From the IMG/VR virus record IMGVR_UViG_3300036770_006296, positions 62,001-126,000 of that record: a stretch of DNA of 64,000 nt; one strand, written 5' to 3'. This document shows, piece by piece, positions 824 through 63,847 of the stretch (the stretch's first letter is position 1; every line of letters starts with the position of its first letter). The translations under genes and the position numbers were made by a program. The notes beneath the pieces were generated by a model. It worked only from the letters and a program-made list of their open reading frames with translations, was not told the origin of the DNA and searched no databases.

Positions 824-865
824 AAACAATTTATTAATTAGATATATAAAACATAAAAAAACAAA

Positions 866-2380
866 ATGAAAAAACAAGTATTATCTTTCAACGAATTTAT
901 ATTCGAAGCTTATAATTCAGTATCTAGAATAATGGAAGGAGAAGTATCCGGAGCTGAAGAATTGATAGAAGCTATAAGTAAATTGGACAAAGCCGGATTA
1001 TCAGCAGAGGCCAAGAAACAGTTAGGCAATTTATCAGGAATAGCTAAAGCAGTTCAAACTACTGAAAATCCAAATGCCGAGAAACATCTAGGAGAAGGCT
1101 TACTAGGGGTTTTGGATAATCTAACAACAACCGGTGTTGAAATAACAGGTATCGTATCAAAGGTTAATACTATTACCTATGACAATCTAATTGCTGGGCA
1201 TGTTTTACTGGAGGATGATAAAAGAGTTAATCTATTGGATTTCTTATATCTTATTAATAGTGAAAACTGTTACAGTAAAATCAATATAGGAGCTTTTGAG
1301 GAAGATGGAAAATTAGAATGGAGCAAGATTCAAACTGATAGAAGATTTACCTTAGCAATGGAGGATTACAGGAAAACAGCAGGTGGCAAAAGATTGAAAC
1401 CTGGAGCAGCTAAATTTGGCAACTTTATTGGATCTTTCTTTTCAAGAGACCCTAATGTTGAGAAAAAAACTAAAGATAGTGTTTACTTAACAGGATCTGG
1501 ATTATTAGGAAATGAAGTTATAACAGGTATCGAAAGCGGAGTTATAAAGACAGAAAAATCTGTTTCCACTTATAAAGATATGGCTCTTGGAGGTAAAAGT
1601 AAAAAAGGAAGAGATAAAAAAGGGTTTTCTAATATTGGAGGAGATAAGAGCGTAATTACTGGATATAATATTGCTCTTCCTTTAGGTGCTGAACTAACGC
1701 CCAATCAAAAATTCCCAACTAAAGGAGCTACTAAAGTATCTAAGAATCCTAAGGCTTACTTTAGTCTTGTTCTTTATACTATGGGACAATCAGAAAAATC
1801 AAATAGAGAAATACCATTTAGTGATTTAGTACTCATAGAAAAAATGAGACCTACTGGCGAAACTATCGTTGAATATACGCTTGATATGTACAACAATGAC
1901 GAAAATGGTAAGCCTCTATTATTTGCTGTGGATTCATCAGTACTTACTGCAGCAGGGAAGGACAACATTAAAGCTGCCATAGAGCAATTTTATGCAATTG
2001 AATCTATAGAGATTCTAGGATTTGCTTCTCAAGAAGGTGCGGTAGATCATAACACTAATCTTTGTAAGGCAAGAGCAAAAGCAGTTGCAGACTTTGTAAA
2101 AAGTGTAAAAGAATGGAACATTCCTGCTACTAGTGTGACTTCTTCAGATACAGCTAACATTCAACCAAAATCTCCAGCAGCAACCGAAACAGAGAGGAAG
2201 AAATGGAGAAAAGTTCAATTTAAAATTAAAGGTACTAAAACAATTACTAGACCTGGGGAAGAAAACTTTATTGAATATGTGCCTACTACTGGTAAATTTA
2301 ATCCAGATAAAGTTGATATCTACCAAACAATTATAACTATGGAAGTTAGCGCTAGATCAACTAGAGTTAAAGGAAGATAA
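866..2380 (+). CDS. CTS-bearing protein with C-terminal OmpA-like peptidoglycan-binding domain
   Basis: IEILGFASQEG..HNTNLCKARAKAVADFV...RKKWRKVQFKI fits the OmpA_C pattern; N-term MKKQVLSFNEFIFE; LP upstream. Confidence 0.6.
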   Translation: MKKQVLSFNEFIFEAYNSVSRIMEGEVSGAEELIEAISKLDKAGLSAEAKKQLGNLSGIAKAVQTTENPNAEKHLGEGLLGVLDNLTTTGVEITGIVSKVNTITYDNLIAGHVLLEDDKRVNLLDFLYLINSENCYSKINIGAFEEDGKLEWSKIQTDRRFTLAMEDYRKTAGGKRLKPGAAKFGNFIGSFFSRDPNVEKKTKDSVYLTGSGLLGNEVITGIESGVIKTEKSVSTYKDMALGGKSKKGRDKKGFSNIGGDKSVITGYNIALPLGAELTPNQKFPTKGATKVSKNPKAYFSLVLYTMGQSEKSNREIPFSDLVLIEKMRPTGETIVEYTLDMYNNDENGKPLLFAVDSSVLTAAGKDNIKAAIEQFYAIESIEILGFASQEGAVDHNTNLCKARAKAVADFVKSVKEWNIPATSVTSSDTANIQPKSPAATETERKKWRKVQFKIKGTKTITRPGEENFIEYVPTTGKFNPDKVDIYQTIITMEVSARSTRVKGR

Positions 2381-2395
2381 AAAATATGACACAAT

Positions 2396-2425
2396 AAAAA
2401 AGGATCCTCTAGGGGATCCTTTTTT
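2396..2425. terminator. bidirectional intrinsic terminator
   Basis: AAAAAAGGATCC-TCTAGG-GGATCCTTTTTT between convergent genes. Confidence 0.85.
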
Positions 2426-2439
2426 GTTTTATACTATTT

Positions 2440-2874
2440 CTAGTTTATTGCAACCACTAAGTAATATTTGCCATTCTTTTCTACTGACTCTACCCAGAAA
2501 CGATTTCCCTCAATGTAGGGTACATAATTACGGAATGTATCCTGTCCTAGCATTTTAACTAAGGAATTACATAATCCATCGACCTTATAATTTTCTGGCT
2601 TCTCAGAAAGCTCCCAAATTTGGTGGAAGTAAGCGTAGTTTTTACCTTTAACTATTTCTTTCCCATCGACCTCCTGGTCAACAAATTTAATACAGCTTTC
2701 TTTTAAAGTTGAGTCGAGTTCAACCTCATGGTTGAAAAACTGCGTGAGACTTTGGTCAAAAGAGACCTTAATCTTGTCGAGTCCTACAAATAAAGGCTGA
2801 GGACCATTACTAAAGCCTTTGTTATTAATTCCAATCAAGGATAAAAATAACAGTGATAAACCTAAATTTTTCAT
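2440..2874 (-). CDS. secreted protein (Sec signal peptide), possibly CAP/SCP-like
   Basis: MKNLGLSLLFLSLIGINNKGFS signal; EP on - strand at ~2900-2940. Confidence 0.65.
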   Translation of the reverse strand: MKNLGLSLLFLSLIGINNKGFSNGPQPLFVGLDKIKVSFDQSLTQFFNHEVELDSTLKESCIKFVDQEVDGKEIVKGKNYAYFHQIWELSEKPENYKVDGLCNSLVKMLGQDTFRNYVPYIEGNRFWVESVEKNGKYYLVVAIN

Positions 2875-2987
2875 AACATAAATTTTAAATTGTTAGACAT
2901 CTCAAATATAGAGCATTATCTACTGATAAAAAAAGGATTCTTGGAATTTATTTAAAATAGAGATATATAATAGAAAAACTAAAAAAA

Positions 2988-4268
2988 ATGAAAAAACAGG
3001 TATTATCGTTCGCCGAATTCGTGTTTGAAGCATATAACACTATGAATGAGGAAGACAAAGTTACAATAGGATCTTTTGATCCCCTAAAAAAAACCCTAGG
3101 AGGGGGATTAAGTTTTAATAAAACTGAGACTGAAAGATTTAAGTTAACAATCGACAGACTAAATATGCTTAATCCTTCTACAAAGGTAGCTGAAGAGGCT
3201 CTTGTAAGAGCAGAAGGTATAACAGAGAAGATAAACCAATCATCAGAAGGGGTTAAGATATCATCAGCAGGAATAACACAGGCTGTTACCGTTACAAACA
3301 AATATGGATGGTTAGTAAATGGTACATGCAGAGTACAAAATGATATTACTGCCGATTCTAGTGTAGCTGAAGGAGATTCTCCTGCTTATAATGGAACAGA
3401 TGGCACTGATGTAGTTGTGGCACCAATAGCATCAGTGTTAAAAAAATTGTTTGCACATAACCTAGATTCAGCTAATGACTTGTTAGGGAAATCAAAAAAG
3501 GAACTTAAAAACGACTCAAATTTTGGAACAAAAGGTAAGAGCAAAGGGAAAAGTGAAGTGTTTTATACTATTGATGAAGACTCATTGAAAGGAGATGTTA
3601 TACAAATTATTAAATTTGAGGGGGAAGTCCCAGGAACTCCAACTGGAGAATATGGATTTGGATTCCCTGTTTATACAATTGCAGAAAATCCAGAAGGAGG
3701 TCTTGCAATTGAGACCGGAACTAACGAGATATCTAAGGATATTTACGATGTGGTTCTTCCCCCAGATCCAACAGCAACAGTTGTGACTGTAGAGAATAAG
3801 CCTTACAATTCAACGGGAGTGGATTTCTTTGAAGAAAATGCGGTTGAGATTGGTGAGGATGGTATGGCAGCTCTTAGAGCTATTCTATCCGAATTTAATA
3901 CAATTTCAAAAATCGTAGTTAATGGAGGAGCATCTAGTAAACCAACTTCCAGAGCAGGAGGAAACGAGAAACTAGCTAAAGATAGAATGGCTGCTGGAGT
4001 TGCTGCTTTGACCCAAATGAAAAAAGATGGTGTTGCTCAGCTAGCTGGTGCTACTATTTCTGCAGGTGAAGCAAAAGTACAGGCTGCAGCACCTTCAGAA
4101 AGCGATCCTAAGAATCAACAGGTTTCTTTTGTAATCTCTGGAACAATTAAAAAAATGGTGGAGAGCACAGATACAACACCCGTTGTTATAAAGAAAGTTG
4201 ATTCCAAGATGGCTCAGGTAGTAACATTGAAAAAGCAATATTTATATTGTAGTTATAATATATCTTAA
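2988..4268 (+). CDS. paralog of 866..2380, degenerate OmpA-like C-terminal domain
   Basis: N-term MKKQVLSFAEFVFEAYN; IVVNGGAS...NEKLAKDRMAAGVAAL...KNQQVSFVI; LP upstream. Confidence 0.6.
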   Translation: MKKQVLSFAEFVFEAYNTMNEEDKVTIGSFDPLKKTLGGGLSFNKTETERFKLTIDRLNMLNPSTKVAEEALVRAEGITEKINQSSEGVKISSAGITQAVTVTNKYGWLVNGTCRVQNDITADSSVAEGDSPAYNGTDGTDVVVAPIASVLKKLFAHNLDSANDLLGKSKKELKNDSNFGTKGKSKGKSEVFYTIDEDSLKGDVIQIIKFEGEVPGTPTGEYGFGFPVYTIAENPEGGLAIETGTNEISKDIYDVVLPPDPTATVVTVENKPYNSTGVDFFEENAVEIGEDGMAALRAILSEFNTISKIVVNGGASSKPTSRAGGNEKLAKDRMAAGVAALTQMKKDGVAQLAGATISAGEAKVQAAAPSESDPKNQQVSFVISGTIKKMVESTDTTPVVIKKVDSKMAQVVTLKKQYLYCSYNIS

Positions 4269-6580: not shown

Positions 6581-6673
6581 TTATTTATCCGGTATTTAAA
6601 GAAAAGTTTCAATAAAACAAAAAAACCCCGGACTCCCGCAAGAAAAAAGATATATAATAAAAAACTTGAATAG

Positions 6674-7384
6674 ATGAAAGTTAAAAATTATAAGAACTTT
6701 ATAAAACTCCAAGAAGTTAGGAGAGAGAAAAAATGCCCCGTATTAAGTTTTAAACCAATTAGAGAATCTGAAACATATCAAGATATGATCGGAATGGGAT
6801 GGATCGAGGTACTAGCAGACAATCCTAAAGGAATTTTAGCATGGGCAACAGCAGAAGAAAGAAGTCATAAAGATAGAATGGGTAACATCGCATTCTATCA
6901 TCCGGTATTTCAAGGGAGAAGATTAACAAGAAGAGCAACCTCGAATGCACCGGAGGGATATCCACACTTTAATATAAAACACGACGGTGGAGTTAGAGTT
7001 GTTGAGGGTCTTCAAAACAGTGCTGAATTTCCAAGATTAACTACAGATCTAACAAGATCTTGTATGACTATTGAGGATTACCTTTACAAAATGAGTTTTT
7101 TAATAAAATATGCTATGAGAGAGCAAGGATTTCCTATCTCAGATAGCGAACTTTATGATAATGAATCCTACAAAGATCTTATAAAAAGAAAAATGCAGGA
7201 AGATCCAACAGTAATCAAACATTTCAAAGATGTAGATGTGCCTTCAGATCCTAGAGAAACAAGTATTGCTGGATCTGAAAAAATATACAAGCAAGTTTCA
7301 CTTCCTCCTAGTTTAAAAAAGGATGATCTAGGAAAAGGAGCTGCGATGTTGAAAAGATTTGGAGCATTCGGAGAAGATGAATAA
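6674..7384 (+). CDS. hypothetical protein, CTS-like N-term and C-terminal KG-tag
   Basis: MKVKNYKNFIKLQE...; ends KGAAMLKRFGAFGEDE; LP at 6649. Confidence 0.85.
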   Translation: MKVKNYKNFIKLQEVRREKKCPVLSFKPIRESETYQDMIGMGWIEVLADNPKGILAWATAEERSHKDRMGNIAFYHPVFQGRRLTRRATSNAPEGYPHFNIKHDGGVRVVEGLQNSAEFPRLTTDLTRSCMTIEDYLYKMSFLIKYAMREQGFPISDSELYDNESYKDLIKRKMQEDPTVIKHFKDVDVPSDPRETSIAGSEKIYKQVSLPPSLKKDDLGKGAAMLKRFGAFGEDE

Positions 7385-9818: not shown

Positions 9819-10220
9819 TTAAAGCATCATACTTAGTGCACCCGATACGTCAGAACCAACATTCTTACCATTTAATTTGAATTCTCCGCCTTTTTTAACT
9901 ATTTGGTAATCCCCTCTTTTTGTTTTAATAGAAACAGTATTACATAAATTTCCCCCACGAGTAAAGAAGTTGTGGACTGACTCTTCTAATCCCCCTCTCC
10001 CGTCTGCTTCTCCAAAAAAGCTCATAGAAACACCTCTGCTTTTATTGAGAATTCTAGGAACACCTAGCTGTGAAGCTCTTTCCCTAATTTTATCTATTTC
10101 ATCTCTTGTAAACCAGTTAACAGATCCTTTGGATCTCTTTTCTGATAATTTAGGTATACCGCTATAGGATGTTTTTGGATTATAGCTGGTAAACTCTTCG
10201 AAAAGCTTTAGGTATTTCAT
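9819..10220 (-). CDS. hypothetical CTS-bearing protein (start corrected to 10220)
   Basis: MKYLKLFEEF start with LP ~30 nt upstream. Confidence 0.75.
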   Translation of the reverse strand: MKYLKLFEEFTSYNPKTSYSGIPKLSEKRSKGSVNWFTRDEIDKIRERASQLGVPRILNKSRGVSMSFFGEADGRGGLEESVHNFFTRGGNLCNTVSIKTKRGDYQIVKKGGEFKLNGKNVGSDVSGALSMML

Positions 10221-10256
10221 TTTTATTCCTATATTTACTCTATATATATCATTGAT

Positions 10257-12962: not shown

Positions 12963-13691
12963 TTAATATTCACCAAATCTCCTAAGCATTCTTGATCCCT
13001 TAAAAGCCTCTTCTGGTGTTTCTCCAAAGAATAATTTTATCCTGTCCTCTAGATGAGGATAAGCTTTTATAGTTCTATGTGCCACTATGGTGAATTCAGA
13101 GAAAGATGTTTTATCAAGAATGTCCTTCAACATAGTAACAATATCGTCATCCGAAACATCCCTTATTCCTATAATCAATTTCTCCTCGTGCTGGTAGTTG
13201 CTTCTTCTCTTGCCATTCCTGAAATTAATGGAATATATTCTACTTCTATTTGGATGATCAATATCTTCAAGGTCCGATGTTCCATAATCAAGCGCTCCAG
13301 TTTCATCTACCATTTCATCATATTCTCCCATACCACCACTCTGATAGAAATCATAAAAAGCCTCCATCTCATCGATGTCCATAAGCCTCCAATTAGTAGC
13401 AGATCCACTCAATGACTCTGGTGTGTTGTGCCAGTCTTTCCCGAGCAGGATCTTCTCTCCCTCGCTGACTTTTCTAAAAGTAAGCATCCCTGGAACAAGC
13501 ACAATCTTATTTCTAAAACGTGGATCGTCAACTAGAAAAACCTGATGCACTGCATAATCTTTATGAAAATTCGAATATTGACAAAGATCCACGGGGATTA
13601 TCCTTCCCATTTCTTTATCTGATAGATCCATTCTAGGGGATTTGTCTATTCCTTCACTTAACATTTCGTAGTATCCCTTGATGTGTTTCAT
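12963..13691 (-). CDS. hypothetical protein, CTS and C-terminal KG-tag
   Basis: MKHIKGYYEMLSE...; ends KGSRMLRRFGEY. Confidence 0.85.
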   Translation of the reverse strand: MKHIKGYYEMLSEGIDKSPRMDLSDKEMGRIIPVDLCQYSNFHKDYAVHQVFLVDDPRFRNKIVLVPGMLTFRKVSEGEKILLGKDWHNTPESLSGSATNWRLMDIDEMEAFYDFYQSGGMGEYDEMVDETGALDYGTSDLEDIDHPNRSRIYSINFRNGKRRSNYQHEEKLIIGIRDVSDDDIVTMLKDILDKTSFSEFTIVAHRTIKAYPHLEDRIKLFFGETPEEAFKGSRMLRRFGEY

Positions 13692-13810
13692 TTTGTAAAT
13701 GTAGTTATTTATTTATCCAACAAAAAATGATTTCTAATTCTAATTCTATTTAATCAAAACTTAACGCTAAATAAGTTATTTACCAGCAATTGTTGCCATA
13801 TATAAATTAA

Positions 13811-48910: not shown

Positions 48911-48911
48911 C

Positions 48912-49247
48912 ATGGCAGAGAAAATAGACCCACTAAAAATTGCAAGGTCCTCCAGAGACATGGACGTGAAAGGACTCGTAGGATTCTTTTATGCACACCA
49001 AAGTAAGTTCTGGTCGTGGGGACCGCACAATTTTGTAGATATAAAAAGTAGAGGCTTACGCTTTAATGTTCAAGGACACCACCACACTGGACATGTGTAT
49101 CTGTTCGTCAATGGATTGGACTTGTTCGATATTTACCTTACCTCATCCCATGGTACGATAAAAGAAACTATAAATGATATTTACTTAGACGATTTGTTTG
49201 ATACTCTTGATAAGAAGATCGAGTGGATTGATATCTATGAAGATTAA
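48912..49247 (+). CDS. hypothetical protein
   Basis: Coupled ORF; stop abuts EP. Confidence 0.75.
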   Translation: MAEKIDPLKIARSSRDMDVKGLVGFFYAHQSKFWSWGPHNFVDIKSRGLRFNVQGHHHTGHVYLFVNGLDLFDIYLTSSHGTIKETINDIYLDDLFDTLDKKIEWIDIYED

Positions 49248-49312
49248 GAAATCATTTTTTTCTTTAGGTAGAAATTTCTATATTAGCTAGGTAACCAATT
49301 AAAATAATAAAA

Positions 49313-49777: not shown

Positions 49778-49794
49778 TCAATTAAAATAATATC

Positions 49795-49986
49795 ATGGGA
49801 ACAAAAAATGTTTATGTCTTAGTCCACTCTAATCCGGATTACGTGAATGTTGAAGTTTATGAAAAAGAGGAGGATGCGATACAAGCTCTTGAAGAGTTAG
49901 CAAATGAGTACGATATGGAAGTGGACGGGAGTGAAGCTTTTGGAGACGAAGATCATGCTATAGTAGAAGAGAAGGAAGTGATATAA
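49795..49986 (+). CDS. small acidic protein
   Basis: A-rich leader. Confidence 0.7.
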   Translation: MGTKNVYVLVHSNPDYVNVEVYEKEEDAIQALEELANEYDMEVDGSEAFGDEDHAIVEEKEVI

Positions 49987-50074
49987 AATAATTTCAATTA
50001 TTTTTCAGAATCATTTTTTTATTCATGTAGAAATTTCTATATTTGTAATGTTAATCAATTAAACAAAAACAATT

Positions 50075-50920: not shown

Positions 50921-51161
50921 GTTTGGTTGATTAACAAAAAGAGAGGAGACTTCGGTCTCCTTTTTTTGTGGACCTAAGTTTATTATCCAGTGAATGATAA
51001 ATCCCCAGAGGTACCCCAGGATCTGGATTTATAACCTGTAATATTGGATTTACATTAAAATAATAATGGGGTCCTCACCAGGGGGCCACGCACGCGTAGG
51101 GTATTTTAGAATAAACCACAAATCATTTTTTAGTTTAGTTAAGATTACTTATATTAGCTAT

Positions 51162-51485
51162 ATGGAAACAATCAATAGAGACACATTCAAAACACATGAA
51201 TTCTTTGCAGAGATTATGAAGAAAGAGTCTCATCACAGCCATGAGATTGTAGATGAAGGTCATGGTGCAAGATGGAAGGAAGATCCTGATGTATGTAAGT
51301 TGGTTGATGACATGGGAGGTTTAAATAACATTATAAGACTTTTCTTTTCACTTGGTATAACAAAGAATTCTGAGGAATGGAGAAAGCTTTACAGAGATAT
51401 AGGTTATTCACTCTATGGATATTGGGAGATATTCTATTGGGAAACGAATAACGAAGATGCTGCTGATTATCGTTCAGATTGTTAG
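51162..51485 (+). CDS. hypothetical protein (start corrected)
   Basis: ATG after EP. Confidence 0.75.
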   Translation: METINRDTFKTHEFFAEIMKKESHHSHEIVDEGHGARWKEDPDVCKLVDDMGGLNNIIRLFFSLGITKNSEEWRKLYRDIGYSLYGYWEIFYWETNNEDAADYRSDC

Positions 51486-51703
51486 TAGTTTGATTGATTA
51501 ACAGGAAAAGGTCGGATTCGCATCCGGCCTTTTTCGTGCTCCAAGGTTTGCTGGATGTTGGCTGGAAGATGCACTGGGGAACCCCAGGAGCTTTAGGCCT
51601 GCCTGGAATTATTTTTAGAAATTTCTATTTTTTTCTAAGAATCATTTTTTTCTAAGTAGAAAAATCCATATATTAGCTAAGTAACCAATTAAATTATTTA
51701 TTT

Positions 51704-52006
51704 ATGAAAAAGGAGATGTCAGTAGAACAAAAAGCAAAAAAAGCAGCAGCTAACAAAGCTTATCGTGAGCGCAAGAAAATGCAATCTCAAGACTGGATGG
51801 TATTGGATAAATTTGAAATGTCGTTTGAACATAAAATTCGACTTTTCAAAAACCTTAAATTGGAAATTGAAAATTCCTATTGCGCAAGTCCCGGTACGGT
51901 CTTAAAGTTTGAGCGAATCAAAAATGAAGACAATAAGATTATCTTCCGAGTCCGTAGAACAGGGCGAAGAACTTTCTTTACGACTTCTGAATTCCTAGTC
52001 GTATAG
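51704..52006 (+). CDS. basic protein family member 1
   Basis: KAYRERKK...CASPGTVLKFE...RVRRTGRRTFFTT. Confidence 0.85.
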   Translation: MKKEMSVEQKAKKAAANKAYRERKKMQSQDWMVLDKFEMSFEHKIRLFKNLKLEIENSYCASPGTVLKFERIKNEDNKIIFRVRRTGRRTFFTTSEFLVV

Positions 52007-52152
52007 GAATTCAGAAGAACCCTGGAAAAGGAGCCATTGGCTCCTTTTTTTGTGACCAAAACCTATGGCTGTCCTATTCTTCTCTGGGGAACCCCAGGAA
52101 GTTTGATCAGGAATCATTTTTTAGTTTCCATAGAATTCGCTACATTTACCAC

Positions 52153-52530
52153 ATGGCTAGATACAAGATAAGATTTAATTTAAGCAAGGGTGTCAACTAC
52201 ATGAAATGGAAGGTGACACATCCTGATGGTGAGGTTGAATACTTAGATCCAAATAAAGTGCGTCTAACGCTTAAAAATTGTCACCTCAAGAACAATCCTA
52301 AGACAGCTAATAAAATCTTAGCAGGCGCAAATAAAAGCGTGTGTGCATGGATCCTTTGTGATGATGTAATCCTTGAGGAACCCCACGGTGGAGATCCAAT
52401 GGAAGAAGTGCAAAGACTCCGGTTCAACCCCAGGGTAGCAGCAAACTGGATGTTCAGAGATGTCAATGTTGACTTTGTGAAGTACCACAGGATAGAAAGC
52501 AGGGGTGATCGCCTTTATGTTATTTATTAG
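52153..52530 (+). CDS. hypothetical protein
   Basis: EP upstream. Confidence 0.75.
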   Translation: MARYKIRFNLSKGVNYMKWKVTHPDGEVEYLDPNKVRLTLKNCHLKNNPKTANKILAGANKSVCAWILCDDVILEEPHGGDPMEEVQRLRFNPRVAANWMFRDVNVDFVKYHRIESRGDRLYVIY

Positions 52531-52593
52531 AAATCATTTTTTTCTTTGTAGAAAATTCTATATATTAGCTAAGTAACCAATTAAATAAAATAA

Positions 52594-52851
52594 ATGAAAA
52601 AGAATTTTTTAGCAGTAGTTGTTTTTAAAGAATATTTAGGAGGACCTGGAGGAGCTGGAGAAGGAATACAGATTCATAAGATCGAGGCATCAGATAAAGA
52701 TGAAGCAAGAAGCATTGTTTATGAAATGCACGGTATTCCTGAAGGACCATCTGAGGATGATTACGAAGATGAGGACGAATATTATGAAGCATCCGAAGAA
52801 TGGGAGGAAGATAATGATGGTGTATGTGTCGAGATCTTTGATTACATTTAA
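52594..52851 (+). CDS. small acidic protein
   Basis: PSEDDYEDEDEYYEASEEWEE resembles the 10802..11494 tract. Confidence 0.75.
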   Translation: MKKNFLAVVVFKEYLGGPGGAGEGIQIHKIEASDKDEARSIVYEMHGIPEGPSEDDYEDEDEYYEASEEWEEDNDGVCVEIFDYI

Positions 52852-52874
52852 AATTAGGAATCATTTTTTTTAAG

Positions 52875-53051
52875 GTGAAACAGATAGAACAAGCTAAAAC
52901 AATTTTAGAATCCCACGACATACTCGATGGCAGGGATTATATAATTTCCCTACAAGGACCGACAGTGATACTAACCATAGAAGGTAAGACTAAAATCACT
53001 CCGCAGATAATTGACGAATTAATTCCCACAGGTGTAGGCGTAATGCTTTAA
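52875..53051 (+). CDS. 58-aa ORF behind a truncated EP (GTG start)
   Basis: AATCATTTTTTT runs straight into the ORF without a -7 element; terminator follows. Confidence 0.4.
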   Translation: MKQIEQAKTILESHDILDGRDYIISLQGPTVILTIEGKTKITPQIIDELIPTGVGVML

Positions 53052-53253
53052 AGTTATGGGATTTTTTTATTTAAATAAAGCCAGCCTTAGAGCTGGTTTT
53101 TTTGTGGATCTTAGAAATCAACTAGGCAGATCTAGATGCACTGGGGAACCCCAGGAAGTCTGATCCAACTTAACCTATAGGTTTATTTTCAGAAATCATT
53201 TTTTTCTTTGTAGAAAAATCTATATATTAGCTAAGTAACTAAATAAACAGAGA

Positions 53254-53490
53254 ATGAAGAAGGGAGATAGAATTAAGGTGACATTTACCAAAGACACATT
53301 ACTAGTTGTATACCCAAAGTCAGACAAGCGTTATAGGGAAGGGTGTGAAGAAATGTTTTTGGAGGGACAAACATTAGAATTTGAGATCTTAGAAATCAAG
53401 AACGAAGGTGAGACTATAGAAGTTAAATTTCTTAGCGAGCTTTATTCAATCCATTACATGGGAGTTATAAGTAATATTATTTTTGTTTGA
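53254..53490 (+). CDS. hypothetical protein
   Basis: EP upstream; 3' end overlaps an inverted gene. Confidence 0.6.
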   Translation: MKKGDRIKVTFTKDTLLVVYPKSDKRYREGCEEMFLEGQTLEFEILEIKNEGETIEVKFLSELYSIHYMGVISNIIFV

Positions 53491-53662
53491 GTTCTTCAAT
53501 AAAATTCAATATACTTTCCTCACCATCAATTGTTTTAACCGAGTCATCTAGATAAATAACAACAATTCTTGGCGGTAAATCGTTCTCCATAAATGATTGA
53601 ATTTTTTCTATTCCTTTAGCATCTAATATTGTTTCATCAATATCTTTTAAATAATCTTTCAT
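53477..53662 (-). CDS. hypothetical protein in inverted cassette
   Basis: Own TATATTTG promoter (~53711-53718, - strand) and A-rich leader. Confidence 0.7.
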   Translation of the reverse strand: MKDYLKDIDETILDAKGIEKIQSFMENDLPPRIVVIYLDDSVKTIDGEESILNFIEELKQK

Positions 53663-53931
53663 AATTTTCTTTTTTAATTGTTAAACAAAAATAATACATA
53701 CTTATAACAACAAATATAAGAAATAAATCTTACTTTGTCTATTTTTTAATGAAAAGATTTACTTCTCATATTTGCAACCGATAAAACTTTTTTATTCCCT
53801 TCTGGGTTTAAAAATAATGATACGCATGGGAGAAGACAGTATTTTAAAATTATCTAAAATCCCAAGGAATCATTTTTTTCTTTAGATAGAATTTTCTACA
53901 TTTGTATCGTAACCACTAAAAAATAAAAAAA

Positions 53932-54297
53932 ATGGATAATCAAGAAGAAGAAAACATAAGGAAGGGCAAAAGTATGCTAGTAAAATTTGGGGTGATTGAT
54001 CCCAGATTAGATAGAGCTGTTAGGAAATATTATAATGGAAGAAGATCAAACGATTCAGCTTTTGATGATATTTTTGAATTCTATTACGATAAAGGAGACC
54101 TTTCAGCCGCGGGTATAACTATAGCGGAGTACGATGAATTAGATTGGAATCCTAGCGTCAGTGTACGAGCGCAGGTTGTAAACTGTGCAGAGCTTGATGA
54201 TGAATTATTTGATTATCTAAGAGGTATTGTAGATCCTGATTGGTACGATGATGACGATGATGACGATGATGACGATGATGACGATGACGGATGGTAG
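53932..54297 (+). CDS. acidic protein, N-terminal KG-tag, poly-Asp tail
   Basis: IRKGKSMLVKFGVI...YDDDDDDDDDDDDDGW. Confidence 0.85.
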   Translation: MDNQEEENIRKGKSMLVKFGVIDPRLDRAVRKYYNGRRSNDSAFDDIFEFYYDKGDLSAAGITIAEYDELDWNPSVSVRAQVVNCAELDDELFDYLRGIVDPDWYDDDDDDDDDDDDDDGW

Positions 54298-54383
54298 AAA
54301 AAGAATTAAAAAGATTTGGAATCATTTTTATTATTGTAGAAGAATCCATATATTAGCTAAGTAAATCAATTAAACAAAATCAA

Positions 54384-54560
54384 ATGGAAAAACTAGCAGC
54401 AAAAATTAATCTAATTGTTGTAGCACTACTCGTTTTATCAGCAGCAGCGATCTTCTTCATCTCAGTGGTAAGAGGAGATTTAATAATTGGTATCATCGGA
54501 GGAGCATTAACTTGGATAGGAATACAAATCTTAAAAATCACAATCAATGAATCAGCGTAA
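54384..54560 (+). CDS. 58-aa two-TM peptide, not in track
   Basis: MEKLAAKINLIVVALLVL...; EP upstream. Confidence 0.65.
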   Translation: MEKLAAKINLIVVALLVLSAAAIFFISVVRGDLIIGIIGGALTWIGIQILKITINESA

Positions 54561-54768
54561 ACCAAACAAAACACTAGGAGACCTATACGTTGAGGTTGTC
54601 CTGGTAATAGGGATACCCTTAGGAATAGTAGCACTACTCAACTGGCTGACCCTATAATATAACGGGGTCCCCACCCGGAGGCCGCGTGCCTACGTGCGTA
54701 CGTGAGGAATAAATCAGAAAAAAACGGAATCATTTTTTTAACCAGAGCATTTTAGATACATTTACCTC

Positions 54769-55056
54769 ATGAACACTTACAAATTTAGAGCAGAATGCCT
54801 TCACGATGTGATACAATTCATGAGTCATGCTCCAGAGGTAATACAACAGATAGATGTACAAAAGGATGAAAGGTTTCCTGATTGCTATGTCACTCTTAAA
54901 ACCACCTCAGAGATGTCAGAAGTACTAAATAAAATACTTGAAATGCAAGGAGACGTTCACGTTATGTTTGAGAGTCTTCAACCAGAAGGGGAATACACAG
55001 GAGAAAGAATAAGAAGCTTTCATTCATCATCAAAAGACAACTTCATGGAGAAGTAA
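54769..55056 (+). CDS. hypothetical protein
   Basis: EP upstream. Confidence 0.75.
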   Translation: MNTYKFRAECLHDVIQFMSHAPEVIQQIDVQKDERFPDCYVTLKTTSEMSEVLNKILEMQGDVHVMFESLQPEGEYTGERIRSFHSSSKDNFMEK

Positions 55057-55294
55057 AAAAGACTATTCTGTGATTAGTTTAGTTTGATTAACACCCAAGA
55101 TAGGGATTCGGCTTCGGCTCGGATCCCTTTTTTGCGAGCCGAGGTTTTTTGACCTGGCCTGGATTAATCTCTGGGGAACCCCAGGAATCCTGATCCAGCA
55201 GATGTAAGAGAAGTGTAAACTTTTTTCAGAAATCATTTTTATTCCTGTAGAAAATTCTATATATTTGTATTGTTAATCAATCAAACAAAAATAA

Positions 55295-55444
55295 ATGAAA
55301 GCAGAAACAAAAAAGAAATTAGAATTCTTAATGGAATTAGGTTTAACCCAAAATGAAATTAATGAACTTCTAGATAATCAATCTATTCTTGATGAATCAA
55401 AAGAATTCAAAAAAGAAGAAGTTGAAGAAGATGAAGATTACTAA
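55295..55444 (+). CDS. 49-aa acidic peptide, not in track
   Basis: MKAETKKKLEFLMELG...EEDEDY; EP upstream, terminator downstream. Confidence 0.7.
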   Translation: MKAETKKKLEFLMELGLTQNEINELLDNQSILDESKEFKKEEVEEDEDY

Positions 55445-55656
55445 GGGGTTAGTAATAAAAAAGGGAAGGAGACTTAGGTCTCCTTTTTTTGTGGGGAAAA
55501 TCTAGACCAGCTAGATGCTCCTGCGGTGCCCCAGGAATCCTGATCCAAACCCCAATAAATTTTTTTTAGAAAATTCCACTTTTTTCCAAGAATCATTTTT
55601 TATATTAGAATATTCTACATATATTTGTATAGTTAATCAATTAAACAATATCAATT

Positions 55657-55968
55657 ATGAAAAAGGAAATGACAGCAGAACAAAAAGCAAAAAAGGCGGC
55701 AGCTAACAAGGCGTACAGAGAGCGCAAAAAAATGCAATCTCAAAACTGGATGGAACTCGACAAGTTCGAAATGAGTTTCGAGCATAAAGTTCGACTTTTC
55801 AAAAACCTCAAATTGGAAATCACAAATTCCTATTGCGCATCTCCGGGGACAGTTTTGAAATTTGAAAAACTCACTAATAACGATAACACAATCGTTTATC
55901 GGGTTCGCCGCACAGGTCGAAGAACTTTCTTCACCACCTCCGTCCACCTTCACGCTCCCGCTGAATAG
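55657..55968 (+). CDS. basic protein family member 2
   Basis: Near-identical to 51704..52006. Confidence 0.85.
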   Translation: MKKEMTAEQKAKKAAANKAYRERKKMQSQNWMELDKFEMSFEHKVRLFKNLKLEITNSYCASPGTVLKFEKLTNNDNTIVYRVRRTGRRTFFTTSVHLHAPAE

Positions 55969-56093
55969 CCGGGACTCACCATAGAAAGGAGCTTAGGCTC
56001 CTTTTTTTGTGCCCAAAGGTTTCTGGATGTAGGCTGAGATAAACTCCTGGGGCTCCTCAGGAAATTTTCACATCTTCCTTATCTATAAGATTT

Positions 56094-56198
56094 ATGGAAG
56101 AGATAGATAAAATAAAAAGATGGGGTTGTATAGGAATAGTATTCATTACTATCCTATGGACTTCACTTATCTACTGGGCATTGTCCAAAGCATTCTGA
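56094..56198 (+). CDS. 34-aa TM peptide, not in track
   Basis: MEEIDKIKRWGCIGIVFITILWTSLIYWALSKAF between two palindromes. Confidence 0.45.
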   Translation: MEEIDKIKRWGCIGIVFITILWTSLIYWALSKAF

Positions 56199-56304
56199 GG
56201 ATCCTCCGAGAATCCCAGCTGGCCCAGAAATAATAATCAGGAATCATTTTTTTATTTGTGGAAAAATCTATATATTAGCTTGTTAATCAATTAAACAAAA
56301 GCCA

Positions 56305-56460
56305 ATGTATTCTTTAGATTGTGATTATTACACAAAACAATTCCCATCCATCGATGATCTCATATCGGATATTATATCATCTGGCATGGACCCAAATTAT
56401 GTAATAACCTATAATGGTGTACCCATAGGTTATCAAGCTATTGAGCTAATTCAATTTTAA
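56305..56460 (+). CDS. 51-aa protein, not in track
   Basis: MYSLDCDYY...QAIELIQF; paralog of next ORF. Confidence 0.75.
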   Translation: MYSLDCDYYTKQFPSIDDLISDIISSGMDPNYVITYNGVPIGYQAIELIQF

Positions 56461-56517
56461 GAAATCATTTTTTTCTTCAAATAGATTTTTCTACATTTAC
56501 ATTATAAAACAAATTTT

Positions 56518-56757
56518 ATGTATTCATTAGACTGTGATTACTACAAAAAAGAATTCTCAACCCTTGATGAACTCTTGGACGATATTATACTATCTGGTAT
56601 GGACCCAAATTATTTAATAACATACAATGGGGCCACCTTCAACTACCAAGCTATTGAACTAATAACTGGACGTATGAGCCAGCATTTCCCGAATGTTAAC
56701 ATTACCAAAGAACTCATGATGACATTTTGCAGTTGGGTAAAGTCCCGGAAGAATTAA
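56518..56757 (+). CDS. paralog of 56305 with new C-terminus from an insertion
   Basis: 17-bp direct repeat at 56647-56663 and 56759-56775. Confidence 0.75.
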   Translation: MYSLDCDYYKKEFSTLDELLDDIILSGMDPNYLITYNGATFNYQAIELITGRMSQHFPNVNITKELMMTFCSWVKSRKN

Positions 56758-56845
56758 TCAAGCTATTGAACTAATTCAATTTTAAGAAATCATTTTTTTC
56801 TTCAAATAGATTTTTCTACATTTACATTATAAAACAAAGACCTAC

Positions 56846-57076: not shown

Positions 57077-57204
57077 AGAAAGACCCTTATTACAGGGTCT
57101 TTTTTGTGGACTATTGTTTACAATAAACCTCCTATTGTAAACCACTGGGGCTCCGCAGGAAAATCAAGAAGAAGATAAGATATATATAGTATAAAAAACA
57201 AATT

Positions 57205-57645
57205 ATGAAACATATTAGGCTTTACGAATACTATTCTGAATTACCAACTTCATTCAGTGTAGCAGAGATCCAAAACATGTCGGAGACGGACTTTTTAACA
57301 AACCTTAAAATGTTAAAAGATAAGGGAGACGAAGAGCAGGCTTTTTCGTTATTACAAATTTGGATGAATCACCATAAAGATGCGGCGAACGACATGGATT
57401 TCAATGCGAAACTCGGAGGTATATTTCGTGACGTTTCTCTTGAATCAGATGACAGCCCTAAGTCTGGCAATTTCCTTCATGATAAAGCAGTGCAATTGAA
57501 CACTTATCTTGCTAAGAACAAACGTGAAGGCGTGGTAAAACAAATAGAAGAGGTAAAAAGAAATATAAAAAATTACGAAGAAATGCTTAGAGTGGCTAAA
57601 GATAGATTAGATAGATTAGAATTTGAAATGACAAAAACTATGTAA
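57205..57645 (+). CDS. CTS-bearing coiled-coil protein
   Basis: MKHIRLYEYYSE; LP at 57179. Confidence 0.8.
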   Translation: MKHIRLYEYYSELPTSFSVAEIQNMSETDFLTNLKMLKDKGDEEQAFSLLQIWMNHHKDAANDMDFNAKLGGIFRDVSLESDDSPKSGNFLHDKAVQLNTYLAKNKREGVVKQIEEVKRNIKNYEEMLRVAKDRLDRLEFEMTKTM

Positions 57646-61300: not shown

Positions 61301-61535
61301 GGGCTAGCAAAATTTTACGAGCCTCCCAAAATGGGTTTCTCTAGGGTTTACTCCGGACTATCTAGGAGGGTCTTGGATTGGTCTAAGGGAGTTACCCCTG
61401 TACATTATATAGGTTATCTCTGATTGTATAGGGGTGGGGCTGGGCCTTGAACAAGTGGTGTGTTCCAAAACCAAAATTTTTTTTTACAGAGAAACTATGG
61501 GTTCCTAGGGCTTCGCCTCGGTGATATATAGATGT

Positions 61536-62153
61536 ATGAAACATATTAGACTATTTGAAAGTTTTAAATCGAAACCAAAATATATCATAATGTATATTAA
61601 TAATTATCTGGATGAAGAGAGAAAGCTAAAGATTTTTGATGATTACGAAAAATGCCTTTATTATTTATTTTGGTTATATCTAAATCATAAGGAATTTGAT
61701 AAAAGACGGGATAAAAAGGAAGATACTCCTATTCCTGGGCCTAATCCATTTTCATCTTCTTTAGGAATTCCTGATGGTCCATGGAAAATATCGGTAACTA
61801 AGCAAGACACCCCTGGTGAGATAGGATTTGGTGAATTCATATATCTTAGTTATCTTGAGGGATACAATCAAATAGATTCGGAAAAAAGATTGGACATTTT
61901 AAAAAGAAGTAATTCATGGGATGAATTCCTGAAAAATTTCAAGCCTCAGGGATCATTAGATATTATTGAATACATCTACATATCTATGGATGATATAGAT
62001 CCTTCTTCTGATAGCTTTTATCCTACTCCTGATCCTCTTGAAGATATTAGTCAAAATCAGATACTTTTAGATATGAACAAGCTTCCTGGAGGATTAGATT
62101 CTTTGATACCTTATTCTGTGTATAAGGAAGATCCTTTTTTATATGTTAATTAA
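61536..62153 (+). CDS. CTS-bearing paralog of 49313..49777 (start corrected)
   Basis: MKHIRLFESF after GATATATAGATGT. Confidence 0.85.
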   Translation: MKHIRLFESFKSKPKYIIMYINNYLDEERKLKIFDDYEKCLYYLFWLYLNHKEFDKRRDKKEDTPIPGPNPFSSSLGIPDGPWKISVTKQDTPGEIGFGEFIYLSYLEGYNQIDSEKRLDILKRSNSWDEFLKNFKPQGSLDIIEYIYISMDDIDPSSDSFYPTPDPLEDISQNQILLDMNKLPGGLDSLIPYSVYKEDPFLYVN

Positions 62154-62244
62154 TAGGGCCGGGGTCCTAAAATCTGGGTGTGTTCCAAAACGAAATTTTT
62201 GCGTGCGTACTGGAATGGGTGTTCCCTCGATGATATATAGATGT

Positions 62245-63117
62245 ATGAAGTATATTAAGCTATTTGAAAATTTTAATGAGCCTGAACAGTTCTGTGAGTA
62301 TTGTTTAGAGCCTGTTGATCTTAAGCTTCTTTCTTATGAAGATAAAAGATCTTTTATAAACACAGGGTTATGCTCTAAGTGTTTAGCTGCAAAGAATGAT
62401 AAAAAATTTAATCCCGAGATAGGTTTTGATGACGTTGATGATTACCCTGAAATTGGTAAGAGAGGCAGTGAATTAGATTCTGCAGCTCTTGATGAATTGG
62501 AAAGCCTAGTGGAAAGGGCTATGAACTATCCGGTAACTAAGGATGGATATTTTAGGTTTTGGGCAGATTTCTTTAGATGGGAGGTTGCTAATAATTATTA
62601 TGGGGGCACACAGTTTTTTACTTTTGAAGTAGGAGGTAAACCATCTAAGGATAGAAAAGAATGGATTTATAAGGAGTATTCTCCTAGAACTTTAAAAGCA
62701 AGACCTGCTCTTAGAATAGGGGTTAAGCTTTTGGCTCTTAGAAAAAGATTTGCACCTGTATGGAAGGAATCTTCTGACTCTTCTTTTATGAGAAATACAA
62801 ATCCAGACGTTTCACCGAATACTCCATACCAGGATGATCTTAACAGGCTTGAGACATCTATTAAAGGGAACGTAAGAGGAGCCGTTATACATAATTGGAG
62901 TAATGCTGACCGTAAGGAATTCCATATGACACTTAGAAGAAATGCGTTGAGAAAAGTTGGATTGGCTAATAGACAAAAATTAATGGCTGATCTTGATTCA
63001 GGTGAATATTTTAAAAACCTTAGCTCTAGAGAACTTGAGGAATTAATGAATAATGCCTTAGATTCTGGTGATTTTAAAACTGTAGAGATTTTAAGAAAAA
63101 TTATGTATCCTGGATAG
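62245..63117 (+). CDS. CTS-bearing protein with Zn finger (start corrected)
   Basis: MKYIKLFENF; CEYC...CSKC. Confidence 0.85.
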   Translation: MKYIKLFENFNEPEQFCEYCLEPVDLKLLSYEDKRSFINTGLCSKCLAAKNDKKFNPEIGFDDVDDYPEIGKRGSELDSAALDELESLVERAMNYPVTKDGYFRFWADFFRWEVANNYYGGTQFFTFEVGGKPSKDRKEWIYKEYSPRTLKARPALRIGVKLLALRKRFAPVWKESSDSSFMRNTNPDVSPNTPYQDDLNRLETSIKGNVRGAVIHNWSNADRKEFHMTLRRNALRKVGLANRQKLMADLDSGEYFKNLSSRELEELMNNALDSGDFKTVEILRKIMYPG

Positions 63118-63334
63118 TAATCCTATTTCTTCTATAATGGTGGGGCCAGGCCCTAAAAATCATCATTGATTGGTTTTAAAAATTTTACGAGCGCGGTGGA
63201 ACAGGGGTTCCTATGGCTTCGCCTCGATTACATACCTTGCCCTCCGGGCTCCTAGATTTTTCTACAGATCTTAAAAACGGCCCTTGGGGCCTTGAGCCTA
63301 AGAATTCATTGATTAGATCTTGGATATATAAGAT

Positions 63335-63847
63335 ATGAAACATATTAAGCTATTTGAGGGTTTTAACGAGGAGCCTATTGTTATACCACAGTTTGTTAAG
63401 GATAGGTTAAGAGATCTGTGTCAGTACTTACGGTCAAGAGATTTATGGGGTTTGAGTATAGATTGTAATATTTATTATAGGGATGACGGGACCTGGAAAA
63501 GCGATTGGCCTATTAGAATTCAAAATAACGAGGGTAAATATGGAGTTTATATTCACTTTAATAGAACCCCAGAGAATTTAAGTGCTAGTGGGGGTATGTA
63601 CTCTGATAAGAATCCTCATATCTATTTTACTAAGGAGACTAATCCTCGTGAAGTGGGTGAGGATATTTATATCCCTTCAGACAATCCATTGGGTAGAGCG
63701 GCTTCTGGGACTCTATATAAAGGAACATATTTATCTGGACGTGGCTATATCAACCATGTAATTTCTAGAGCTTGCGGAGAGGATGAAGAATTTAAAAAAT
63801 TATTATGGGCTCTAATAACAGATATACAAGGAATTTTACCTTATTAA
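63335..63847 (+). CDS. CTS-bearing hypothetical protein
   Basis: MKHIKLFEGF; LP at 63323. Confidence 0.85.
   Translation: MKHIKLFEGFNEEPIVIPQFVKDRLRDLCQYLRSRDLWGLSIDCNIYYRDDGTWKSDWPIRIQNNEGKYGVYIHFNRTPENLSASGGMYSDKNPHIYFTKETNPREVGEDIYIPSDNPLGRAASGTLYKGTYLSGRGYINHVISRACGEDEEFKKLLWALITDIQGILPY

What the first reader, a model, noticed from the sequence alone, without database searches (positions are those of the whole stretch)
841..63847. CTS-like N-terminal peptide co-occurs with a late-type promoter: a large set of candidate virion-packaged, co-injected proteins
Seen: about 11 mostly unrelated ORFs start with MK(H/Y/R)I(K/R)x(F/Y)E..F/E or a variant (866, 2988, 6674, 10220, 13691, 20056, 22759, 57205, 61536, 62245, 63335). 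Nearly all have GATA(T/A)ATA within ~10-40 nt upstream, and typical EP genes lack the peptide. Established: T4 internal proteins use an N-terminal capsid-targeting sequence (MKTYQEFIAE), are cleaved after Glu by gp21 protease, and come from TATAAATA late promoters. Inference: this phage packages and injects a cargo that includes a kinase-like, OmpA-like, Zn-finger and acidic proteins.
Basis: partly seen in the sequence, partly recalled or inferred. Interest (0 to 1): 0.72.

Follow-up and report, generated by a model that had tools for sequence, protein, structure and literature searches.

The report
T4-like capsid-targeting leader on many phage genes
An uncultured freshwater jumbo phage puts the same ~13-residue N-terminal tag, which resembles phage T4's capsid-targeting sequence, on about one gene in six, so these unrelated proteins are probably loaded into the phage head and trimmed by its T4-type protease; loading and injection are not yet shown.

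Summary
All 11 ORFs start with the stated peptide. Genome-wide (206.6-kb IMG/VR record), a matrix built from these N-termini finds 56 of 329 genes, against about 1.6 expected. After the leader is trimmed, 52 of the 56 are unrelated. Synonymous codons in the leader follow genomic usage, so selection acts on the peptide. GATA[TA]ATA lies within 60 nt upstream of 27/56 leader genes against 21/273 others (p=7e-12). It also precedes tail-fibre genes and, in a ~90%-identical relative, head genes. Genes with the Bacteroidota-type early promoter lack the leader.

The exact peptide MKHIKLFE occurs in at least 119 IMG/VR stretches, with consensus MKHIKLFEQF[IVL]NE and conservation ending at Glu13. It occurs in only 8 MAG contigs among 596 Gb of prokaryote genomes.

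All five complete leader-bearing records encode a T4 gp21-family protease. The close relative supplies the missing head module: a protease fused to a scaffold rich in [ILV]xE, and a gp23-type capsid protein. The matrix also ranks T4's IPI, IPII and IPIII 5th, 8th and 9th of 627 T4 ORFs.

Best reading: a T4-type capsid-targeting leader (confidence ~0.6). Packaging, cleavage and injection remain untested.

The parts
2..823 (+). C-terminal part of a 703-aa leader-bearing protein. Its start (MIRMKYLSLFDDFDQIEES) lies 1288 nt upstream of the window.
   Evidence: genome coordinates 60712-62823.
841..2380 (+). GATATATA octamer (841-848) and leader gene 866-2380, 504 aa. It starts MKKQVLSFNEFIFE|AYN and has a C-terminal OmpA-like domain.
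   Evidence: The syntenic allele in relative G043 is 25% identical overall, but its first 16 aa are 15/16 identical.
2962..4268 (+). GATATATA octamer (2962-2969) and leader gene 2988-4268, 426 aa, starting MKKQVLSFAEFVFE|AYN.
   Evidence: No Pfam or PHROG family.
6649..7384 (+). GATATATA octamer (6649-6656) and leader gene 6674-7384, 236 aa, starting MKVKNYKNFIKLQE|V. This is a weaker variant of the leader.
   Evidence: (score 13.7).
9819..10250 (-). Leader gene 9819-10220, 133 aa, starting MKYLKLFEEF, with its GATATATA octamer at 10243-10250.
12963..13717 (-). Leader gene 12963-13691, 242 aa, starting MKHIKGYYEMLSE|G, with a GATAAATA octamer at 13710-13717.
19472..20143 (-). Leader gene 19472-20056, 194 aa, starting MKHIVIFENFFE|S. 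Its nearest octamer (20136-20143) is 79 nt upstream.
   Evidence: This is the one claimed gene without an octamer close to the start.
22307..22771 (-). Leader gene 22307-22759, 150 aa, starting MKRIKTFGHISE|S (weak variant), with a GATAAATA octamer at 22764-22771.
   Evidence: (score 10.5).
57179..57645 (+). GATATATA octamer (57179-57186) and leader gene 57205-57645, 146 aa, starting MKHIRLYE|YY.
61523..62153 (+). GATATATA octamer (61523-61530, only 5 nt before the ATG) and leader gene 61536-62153, 205 aa, starting MKHIRLFE|SF.
   Evidence: A 236-nt contig at >=99% identity is present in a lake metatranscriptome library. This is weak evidence.
62232..63117 (+). GATATATA octamer (62232-62239) and leader gene 62245-63117, 290 aa, starting MKYIKLFENFNE|P.
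   Evidence: A longer ORF from 62143 exists, but both the octamer and the leader point to 62245 as the start.
63323..63847 (+). GATATATA octamer (63323-63330) and leader gene 63335-63847, 170 aa, starting MKHIKLFEGFNE|E. It is the first gene of a leader-gene island that continues beyond the window to genome position ~145 kb.
23094..56789 (+). Contrast region: an early-gene block with about 48 copies of a ~40-nt promoter element (AATCATTTTTTT-N9-TAGAATTTTCTAcATTTG, Bacteroidota TAnnTTTG type). None of these genes carries the leader.
50075..50920 (+). Phage sigma-70-family factor gene behind an early promoter (element at 50010). It is one of three paralogues and a candidate reader of the GATATATA promoters. 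This role is an inference.
   Evidence: phrog_351, E=7e-52; paralogues.

Best explanation
The shared N-terminus is a T4-type capsid-targeting leader. In this phage it reads M-K-[HYR]-[ILV]-[KR]-x-[FY]-E-x-F-[ILV]-x-E. Across its clade the consensus is MKHIKLFEQF[IVL]NE.

Proposed mechanism:
1. The genes are transcribed from GATA[TA]ATA promoters together with head and tail genes.
2. The leader docks the otherwise unrelated proteins onto the scaffolding core of the assembling prohead.
3. The lineage's gp21-family (Peptidase_S77) prohead protease cuts after the Glu of [ILVF]-x-E, at residue 8 and/or about residue 13. The leader leaves and the mature protein stays inside the head.
4. Some of these proteins would then enter the host with the DNA.

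Shown here: the motif, its statistics, selection at peptide level, its modular attachment to unrelated bodies, the promoter association, the T4-type head genes of the lineage, and the likeness to T4's proven CTS. Inferred: docking, cleavage, retention and injection.
For: - 56/329 genes carry the leader against ~1.6 expected, always within the first ~12 residues.
- 52/56 bodies are unrelated.
- Synonymous codons in the leader match genome usage: His CAT/CAC 16/11 against 14.9/12.1 expected; Phe TTT/TTC 71/27 against 66.9/31.1.
- In 126 unique IMG/VR proteins found through MKHIKLFE alone, the unconstrained positions are conserved (aromatic at 10 in 95%, [ILV] at 11 in 66%, Glu at 13 in 67%). Conservation then stops. 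These proteins fall into 92 body clusters.
- Only 8 matches occur in 596 Gb of prokaryote genomes, all in MAGs.
- Peptidase_S77 is present in 5/5 complete leader-bearing records and 22/47 overall; most records are fragments.
- Relative G043 (~90% nt identity, collinear) has an S77 protease (E=3e-10) fused to a scaffold-like domain, and a Gp23 capsid protein (E=5e-38), behind GATATATA.
- The protease-scaffold proteins have a conserved V-N-E-S junction after the protease domain. They carry 26-30 [ILV]xE sites in the C-terminal part (z=3.7-6.6 against shuffles; 5-6 per 100 aa against 1.9 proteome-wide).
- The T4 CTS is MKTYQEFIAE. One gene of this phage starts MIQHYEEFIAE.
- The matrix ranks T4 IPI, IPIII and IPII 5th, 8th and 9th of 627 T4 ORFs.
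- In the complete relative G026, a 130-aa leader protein sits between the portal and protease genes, where T4 has gp67 and gp68. Sixteen consecutive leader genes form an array there.
- The octamer also precedes tail-fibre-like genes and the head genes of G043.
- Syntenic alleles keep the leader while the body has diverged to 25% identity.
Against: - There is no direct evidence of packaging, cleavage or injection.
- This record lacks its own head module. The protease and capsid protein come from a ~90%-identical relative.
- 17% of all genes is far more than T4's handful of CTS proteins. The set includes two ~500-aa MoxR-type AAA ATPases and a DUF2201 metallopeptidase, which are not typical head cargo.
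- The association of the leader with S77 is a clade trait, not a set of independent events.
- No T4 gp55 homologue was found, so 'late' rests on co-occurrence with structural genes.
- The peptide-protease complex prediction gave no answer.
- RNA libraries showed only tiny fragments.
Confidence: 0.62

Rival explanations
1. The leader is recognised by the prohead core and/or protease, but it marks transient assembly or core components, or proteins activated by S77 cleavage. These are degraded or expelled at maturation. On this reading it is not an injected arsenal.
For: T4's core proteins gp22, gp67 and gp68 are cut into fragments and leave the head (PMC5694885). Leader proteins lie inside the head modules of G043 and G026. 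MoxR ATPases and a DUF2201 metallopeptidase among the leader proteins look more like assembly helpers than effectors.
Against: Most leader genes lie far from the head module in variable islands. They have fast-diverging bodies and a conserved leader, which is the pattern of T4's internal proteins. Bodies include OmpA-like, GNAT and ankyrin domains.
Confidence: 0.17
2. The conserved start is an RNA-level signal. It would be a translation-initiation or stability element for short-leader or leaderless late mRNAs, possibly tied to Bacteroidota-style initiation without a Shine-Dalgarno sequence. The peptide would be a by-product.
For: The octamer ends only 4-6 nt before the ATG in many genes, so some mRNAs would be leaderless. 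The codons are A/U-rich.
Against: Synonymous codon choice within the motif equals genome-wide usage. Replacements are conservative at the amino-acid level: I/L/V, F/Y, K/R, E/D. Tail-fibre genes with the same promoter lack the leader. In G026 the leader is kept in tightly packed operon genes that have no octamer of their own.
Confidence: 0.05
3. The leader targets proteins elsewhere, for example to the membrane, to a phage-made compartment, or to a chaperone or protease such as ClpXP. The likeness to the T4 CTS would then be convergent.
For: The motif has hydrophobic residues at i, i+3 and i+6, the spacing of a helical periodicity (inference; no structure was predicted). Such segments serve many targeting roles. 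No binding partner was shown.
Against: The sharp end of conservation at Glu fits a cleaved propeptide, as do the identical [ILV]xE sites in the lineage's own scaffold. The matrix specifically retrieves T4's internal proteins. The leader has no transmembrane or signal-peptide character.
Confidence: 0.1
4. The shared start is a relic of duplication or of a recombination cassette (promoter plus first codons) and has no function of its own.
For: The promoter and leader are locally repeated, for example upstream of 61536 and 62245. Allele swaps break near the leader.
Against: 52/56 bodies are unrelated. The leader is conserved across records that share no nucleotide similarity with this one (G026) and across at least 119 IMG/VR stretches with free synonymous variation. 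Its position relative to Met1 is fixed.
Confidence: 0.04

Closest known systems
Phage T4 capsid-targeting sequence (CTS) of the internal proteins IPI, IPII, IPIII and Alt, removed by the gp21 prohead protease (Mullaney & Black 1996, as cited in PMC5694885; sequence MKTYQEFIAE in bioRxiv 10.1101/2021.01.19.427310)
   Same: - A short leader at the very N-terminus.
- A core of the form [FY]-x-x-F-[ILV]-x-E that ends in a gp21-type [ILV]-x-Glu site.
- Attachment to unrelated, fast-evolving bodies.
- A gp21-family protease, a gp23-type capsid protein, and the gene order portal, small core protein, protease, scaffold, capsid protein in the lineage.
- An AT-rich single-octamer promoter shared with structural genes.
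- The matrix from this phage retrieves T4's internal proteins.
   Different: - The leader is about 3 residues longer (13 aa; MKHIKLFEQFINE) and has two nested candidate cleavage sites.
- It sits on 56 genes (17% of the genome) rather than a handful.
- The protease is fused to the scaffold.
- The promoter is GATATATA rather than TATAAATA, and no gp55 homologue was found.
- The host is probably Bacteroidota.
- Nothing has been shown experimentally.
Ejection and inner-body proteins of the giant phages phiKZ and SPN3US, processed by an S80 protease (PMC5694885, PMC7411985, PMC10052503)
   Same: A jumbo phage with dozens of head-internal proteins. The protease is related to gp21 and cuts after Glu. 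The propeptides are thought to act as targeting signals. The G043 protease also matches Peptidase_S80.
   Different: The giant-phage propeptides are mostly longer than 100 residues and are not one shared short motif. Their cleavage motif is A/S/G-x-E. Here there is one short leader common to all, and [ILV]-x-E.
Hypervariable internal-protein loci of T-even phages, in which diverse anti-restriction proteins share only the CTS (PMC3012670)
   Same: Conserved leader with swapped or diverged bodies. Examples are the G000 and G043 alleles, the 16-gene array in G026, and the island at genome positions 119-145 kb.
   Different: The scale is much larger, and the functions of the bodies are unknown. 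None matches IPI or other known anti-restriction proteins.

Membership tests
T4-type capsid-targeting sequence (CTS) leader | Short (10-20 aa) peptide at the extreme N-terminus | tested here: met
   The motif core begins 0-11 residues from Met1, mostly 2-3. In IMG/VR proteins, conservation ends at residue 13.
T4-type capsid-targeting sequence (CTS) leader | Sequence likeness to the proven T4 CTS (MKTYQEFIAE) | tested here: met
   T4 CTS residues 2-10 score 8.7 bits on the matrix. Only 0.036% of internal 9-mers do as well. IPI, IPIII and IPII rank 5th, 8th and 9th of 627 T4 ORFs. One gene of this phage starts MIQHYEEFIAE.
T4-type capsid-targeting sequence (CTS) leader | Leader ends in a gp21-type cleavage site (hydrophobic-x-Glu) | tested here: met
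   All 11 window genes have [ILVF]-x-E ending at residue 8-14. 55% of the IMG/VR set have [ILV]-x-E at residues 11-13. The site is present in sequence only; cleavage itself was not tested.
T4-type capsid-targeting sequence (CTS) leader | The same phage encodes a gp21-family prohead protease and a T4-type core and capsid | tested here: inconclusive
   Not found in this record, which is 81% complete and lacks the head module. Present in G043 (~90% identical, collinear) and in 5/5 complete leader-bearing records.
T4-type capsid-targeting sequence (CTS) leader | Attached to otherwise unrelated proteins (modular) | tested here: met
   52/56 are singletons after trimming. The 126 IMG/VR proteins form 92 clusters. 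Alleles have 25% identical bodies with a 15/16 identical leader.
T4-type capsid-targeting sequence (CTS) leader | Protein is found inside the head with the leader removed | not testable with these tools
   This needs virion proteomics with N-terminal mapping. No cultured relative carrying the leader was found: PAU, MA9V-1 and T4 give 0 pattern matches (T4's own CTS, MKTYQEF, does not fit this search pattern) and the uncultured LR756500 gives 10.
T4-type capsid-targeting sequence (CTS) leader | Leader is sufficient to direct a foreign protein into proheads | not testable with these tools
   This needs a reporter-fusion experiment. The complex prediction of leader with protease domain gave no answer.
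Late promoter of T4-type phages | A single AT-rich octamer just upstream of late (structural) genes | tested here: met
   38 of 49 GATATATA copies lie within 60 nt upstream of a gene. The octamer lies before tail-fibre-like genes and before the protease-scaffold and other head and tail genes of G043. It is nearly absent from the early block.
Late promoter of T4-type phages | Read by a gp55-type sigma factor with gp33 and the sliding clamp; late timing | tested here: not met
   A single-sequence search found no gp55 homologue in this record. Three sigma-70-family paralogues are present instead. Timing was not testable.

The most novel reading that the evidence does not exclude
The leader is a sequence-readable address label for the head interior. 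This clade of uncultured ~250-480-kb freshwater Bacteroidota phages would then pack and inject an arsenal of 30-60 different, rapidly diversifying proteins per genome (17% of the genes here). That is several times the number of CTS-bearing proteins known in T4 (IPI-III, Alt and the core proteins). The whole 'ejectome' of any such phage, including candidate anti-defence effectors, could then be read from metagenomic sequence alone.
Probability: 0.35. Interest if true: 0.8.

Novelty: new member of a known kind. Interest (0 to 1): 0.62.

Why it matters
Proteins that a phage injects with its DNA are its first strike against host defences. They are very hard to recognise from sequence. If this leader works like the T4 CTS, it labels such proteins directly in metagenomes. 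There are dozens per genome in a widespread, uncultured jumbo-phage clade, nearly all without known families. It would also show that CTS-directed loading is an old trait of the whole T4-type head lineage and not a T-even speciality. Finally, it would offer a new short tag for packing foreign proteins into capsids. No description of this motif was found in the searched literature.

Tried and rejected
- A complex prediction of the G043 protease domain (residues 1-162, 8-row alignment) with residues 1-30 of the window protein 866-2380 gave no verdict (score 0.01). It counts neither for nor against binding.
- Laying RNA-library contigs on 58001-64000 gave only four short contigs at >=99% identity inside genes 61536 and 62245. 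There were no transcript ends and no proof of transcription.
- Pfam searches for gp21 and gp23 in the record itself were empty, because the head module is missing.
- PHROG and Pfam gave nothing for 10 of the 11 window leader proteins. 'Kinase-like' and 'Zn-finger' are therefore unsupported.
- The comparison of leader against body conservation in G000-G043 orthologues was confounded by start-codon choices in my simple gene caller. I did not use it beyond single examples.
- No T4 gp55 homologue was found.
- bS21 is present in only one of five complete relatives, so the clade is not simply the published bS21 phage group (PMC9723584).
- Literature string searches for the motif found nothing relevant.
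- The window contains no tRNA or Rfam families.
- Paralogy and an RNA-level signal were considered and rejected as explanations.

Full report
**What the window is.** The window is bases 62001-126000 of a 206,617-bp linear IMG/VR virus record that CheckV rates 81% complete. Its split family-B DNA polymerase is closest to uncultured huge phages: LR756500 at 41% identity, then other LR7565xx records and the Lak phages. Only after these come the cultured Sphingomonas phage PAU and Chryseobacterium phage MA9V. Near-identical DNA occurs in freshwater, lake and subsurface metagenomes. The record encodes replication, nucleotide-metabolism and tail-fibre-like genes but no head genes.

**The observation.** All eleven starts give the reported peptides. 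Ten have GATA[TA]ATA ending 4-22 nt before the ATG. The eleventh has its octamer 79 nt upstream.

A strict regex (MK[HYRKT][ILVQ][KRV]x[FY]) finds 16 genes genome-wide. Inspection of all N-termini showed a broader family, M..[ILV]..F..F[ILV]xE. An 11-column matrix, iterated from these seeds, flags 56 of 329 called genes. The threshold is one that 0.5% of internal windows pass, so about 1.6 are expected. In the window it flags ten of the eleven. The eleventh (62245) is missed only because my gene caller picked an upstream start.

**Not paralogues and not an RNA signal.** With the leader trimmed, 52 of the 56 proteins have no BLAST match to each other at E<=1e-3. Inside the motif, synonymous codons occur at genomic frequencies (His 16:11 against 14.9:12.1 expected; Phe 71:27 against 66.9:31.1; Ile 22:6:35 against 19.6:10.4:33). 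Substitutions are conservative at the amino-acid level. Selection therefore acts on the peptide.

**The promoters.**
- GATATATA is the most over-represented upstream 8-mer: 38 of its 49 genomic copies lie within 60 nt upstream of a gene, against 2.3 expected.
- It precedes 27/56 leader genes and 21/273 others (odds ratio 11, p=7e-12).
- Its spacing to the ATG is bimodal, 4-6 nt or 15-22 nt.
- It also precedes two tail-fibre-like genes and, in the close relative G043, the protease-scaffold gene and other head and tail genes. This supports 'late-type'.
- Window 23.1-56.8 kb is different. It carries about 48 copies of a ~40-nt element ending TAGAATTTTCTAcATTTG, which is the Bacteroidota sigma-A type. 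None of those genes has the leader.
- A sigma-70-family gene (50075-50920) sits in this early block. It is a candidate reader of the octamer, by inference. No T4 gp55 homologue was found.

**The leader is a clade-wide, phage-specific module.**
- The 126 unique proteins fall into 92 body clusters.
- They are conserved at positions the search did not constrain: aromatic at 10 in 95%, [ILV] at 11 in 66%, Glu at 13 in 67%. Conservation then vanishes. The consensus is MKHIKLFEQF[IVL]NE.
- The same pattern occurs only 8 times in 596 Gb of prokaryote genomes. All are in MAG contigs, three of them labelled Bacteroidetes, Cytophagales or Flavobacteriaceae.
- The bodies include GNAT, ankyrin and OmpA-like domains, MoxR ATPases and a DUF2201 metallopeptidase, but most have no family.
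- LR756500 has ten copies of a variant (MKYIKEYE). The cultured PAU, MA9V-1 and T4 have none under that pattern; T4's CTS, MKTYQEF, does not fit it.

**Link to T4-type head assembly.**
- Peptidase_S77 (T4 gp21) is present in 22 of 47 leader-bearing IMG/VR records and in all five that are at least 90% complete. Most of the others are fragments, at 10-50% of a ~250-300-kb genome.
- Record G043 is ~90% nucleotide-identical and collinear with this genome: its 67976-147607 matches our 1-87572. It extends 68 kb upstream.
- That extension holds a 696-aa protein with an S77/S80 protease domain (E=3e-10) and a 594-aa Gp23-family capsid protein (E=5e-38), with GATATATA 10 nt before the protease gene.
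- An alignment of eight such proteases shows conserved His and Ser motifs (ELDHP, SSRAAG), then a conserved V-N-E-S junction after the protease domain, then a scaffold-like region of 14-residue repeats (YSEYLAENLDKNIS).
- That region contains 26-30 [ILV]-x-E sites, which is 5-6 per 100 aa against 1.9 proteome-wide, with z=3.7-6.6 against shuffles.
- This is the pattern of a T4 gp22-like scaffold chopped after Glu. It is also the same tripeptide that ends the leader (F-[ILV]-N-E, L-F-E).
- In the complete 256-kb relative G026, 28 of 346 genes carry the leader. One 130-aa leader protein lies between the portal and protease genes, where T4 has gp67 and gp68. Sixteen consecutive leader genes form an array.

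**Direct comparison with T4.**
- The T4 CTS is MKTYQEFIAE. It is cut once and leaves the head, and any protein fused to it is packaged (PMC5694885; PMC3012670).
- One gene of this phage starts MIQHYEEFIAE.
- T4's CTS scores 8.7 bits on positions 2-10 of the matrix, which is reached by 0.036% of internal 9-mers.
- I scanned all 627 ORFs of at least 40 aa in the first 150 kb of T4 with the matrix learnt only from this phage. IPI ranked 5th, IPIII 8th and IPII 9th. The chance that three named ORFs all fall in the top nine is about 2e-6 (my calculation).

**Diversification.** At the syntenic site, the OmpA-like leader protein of this record (866-2380) and that of G043 are only 25% identical (E=2e-19). 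Their first 16 residues and their promoters are nearly identical, and the flanks are ~90% identical at the nucleotide level. This mirrors the T-even internal-protein loci.

**Verdict.** The best explanation is a T4-type capsid-targeting leader cut by the lineage's gp21-family protease (confidence ~0.6). [quoted passage not shown] The main rival is that they are transient core or assembly proteins.

The limits are these. There is no experimental evidence. The head module is borrowed from a close relative. Clade-level traits are not independent events. The RNA and complex-prediction tests gave no answer.

I file this as a new member of a known kind, because the mechanism proposed is T4's. It is unusual in its scale (17% of genes), in its longer consensus and in the fused protease-scaffold.

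Noticed in passing
window 15253-19444 (-): Nine tandem paralogous genes (115-231 aa), each starting MT(R/Q)EEFI... They have 4-nt overlaps and near-identical upstream sequence, and they are not of the leader type. They form the largest paralogue family in the genome.
   Followed up: no
window 23094-56789 (+): About 48 copies of a ~40-nt early promoter element (AATCATTTTTTT-N9-TAGAATTTTCTAcATTTG), roughly one per gene. The -7 box TAnnTTTG is of the Bacteroidota sigma-A type and points to a Bacteroidota host.
   Followed up: partly
window 61523-61538, 62232-62247, 63323-63337 and other sites: The GATATATA-to-ATG spacing is bimodal, 4-6 nt or 15-22 nt. The short class implies leaderless or nearly leaderless late mRNAs.
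   Followed up: no
window 2440-2874 (-) and 4329-4775 (-): Each of the two OmpA-type leader genes is followed by a convergent small gene. Both small genes have a signal-peptide-like start (MKNLGLSLLFLSL..., MKNLFLILAVILV...) and an early-type promoter. The pairing looks like effector plus immunity, but this is untested.
   Followed up: no
L165 (T4, NC_000866) 18966-19130 (-): T4 gp61.1 (54 aa, MKTFKEFIKEDMVAG...) scores higher on this phage's leader matrix than ipI, ipII and ipIII. It may be an unrecognised CTS-bearing protein in T4.
   Followed up: no
L136 405-2495 (G043); L146 11569-13383 (G026): In this clade the gp21-type protease is fused to a long scaffold-like C-terminus. That region is built of 14-residue repeats (YSEYLAENLDKNIS) plus an acidic tract. 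A conserved V-N-E-S junction suggests self-release.
   Followed up: partly
window 20000-36000: GC content rises to 0.41-0.44, against 0.33-0.36 elsewhere. Positions 20.2-22.3 kb have only poor ORFs with G/C-rich runs, and no tRNA or Rfam match.
   Followed up: no
window 30292-35440: A CobS/MoxR-like AAA ATPase and two CobT/VWA-like proteins sit behind early promoters. Two further MoxR-type ATPases elsewhere in the genome (genome positions 23285 and 47757) carry the leader, and a DUF2201 metallopeptidase-like gene lies near each (20383 carries the leader; 49247 does not).
   Followed up: partly
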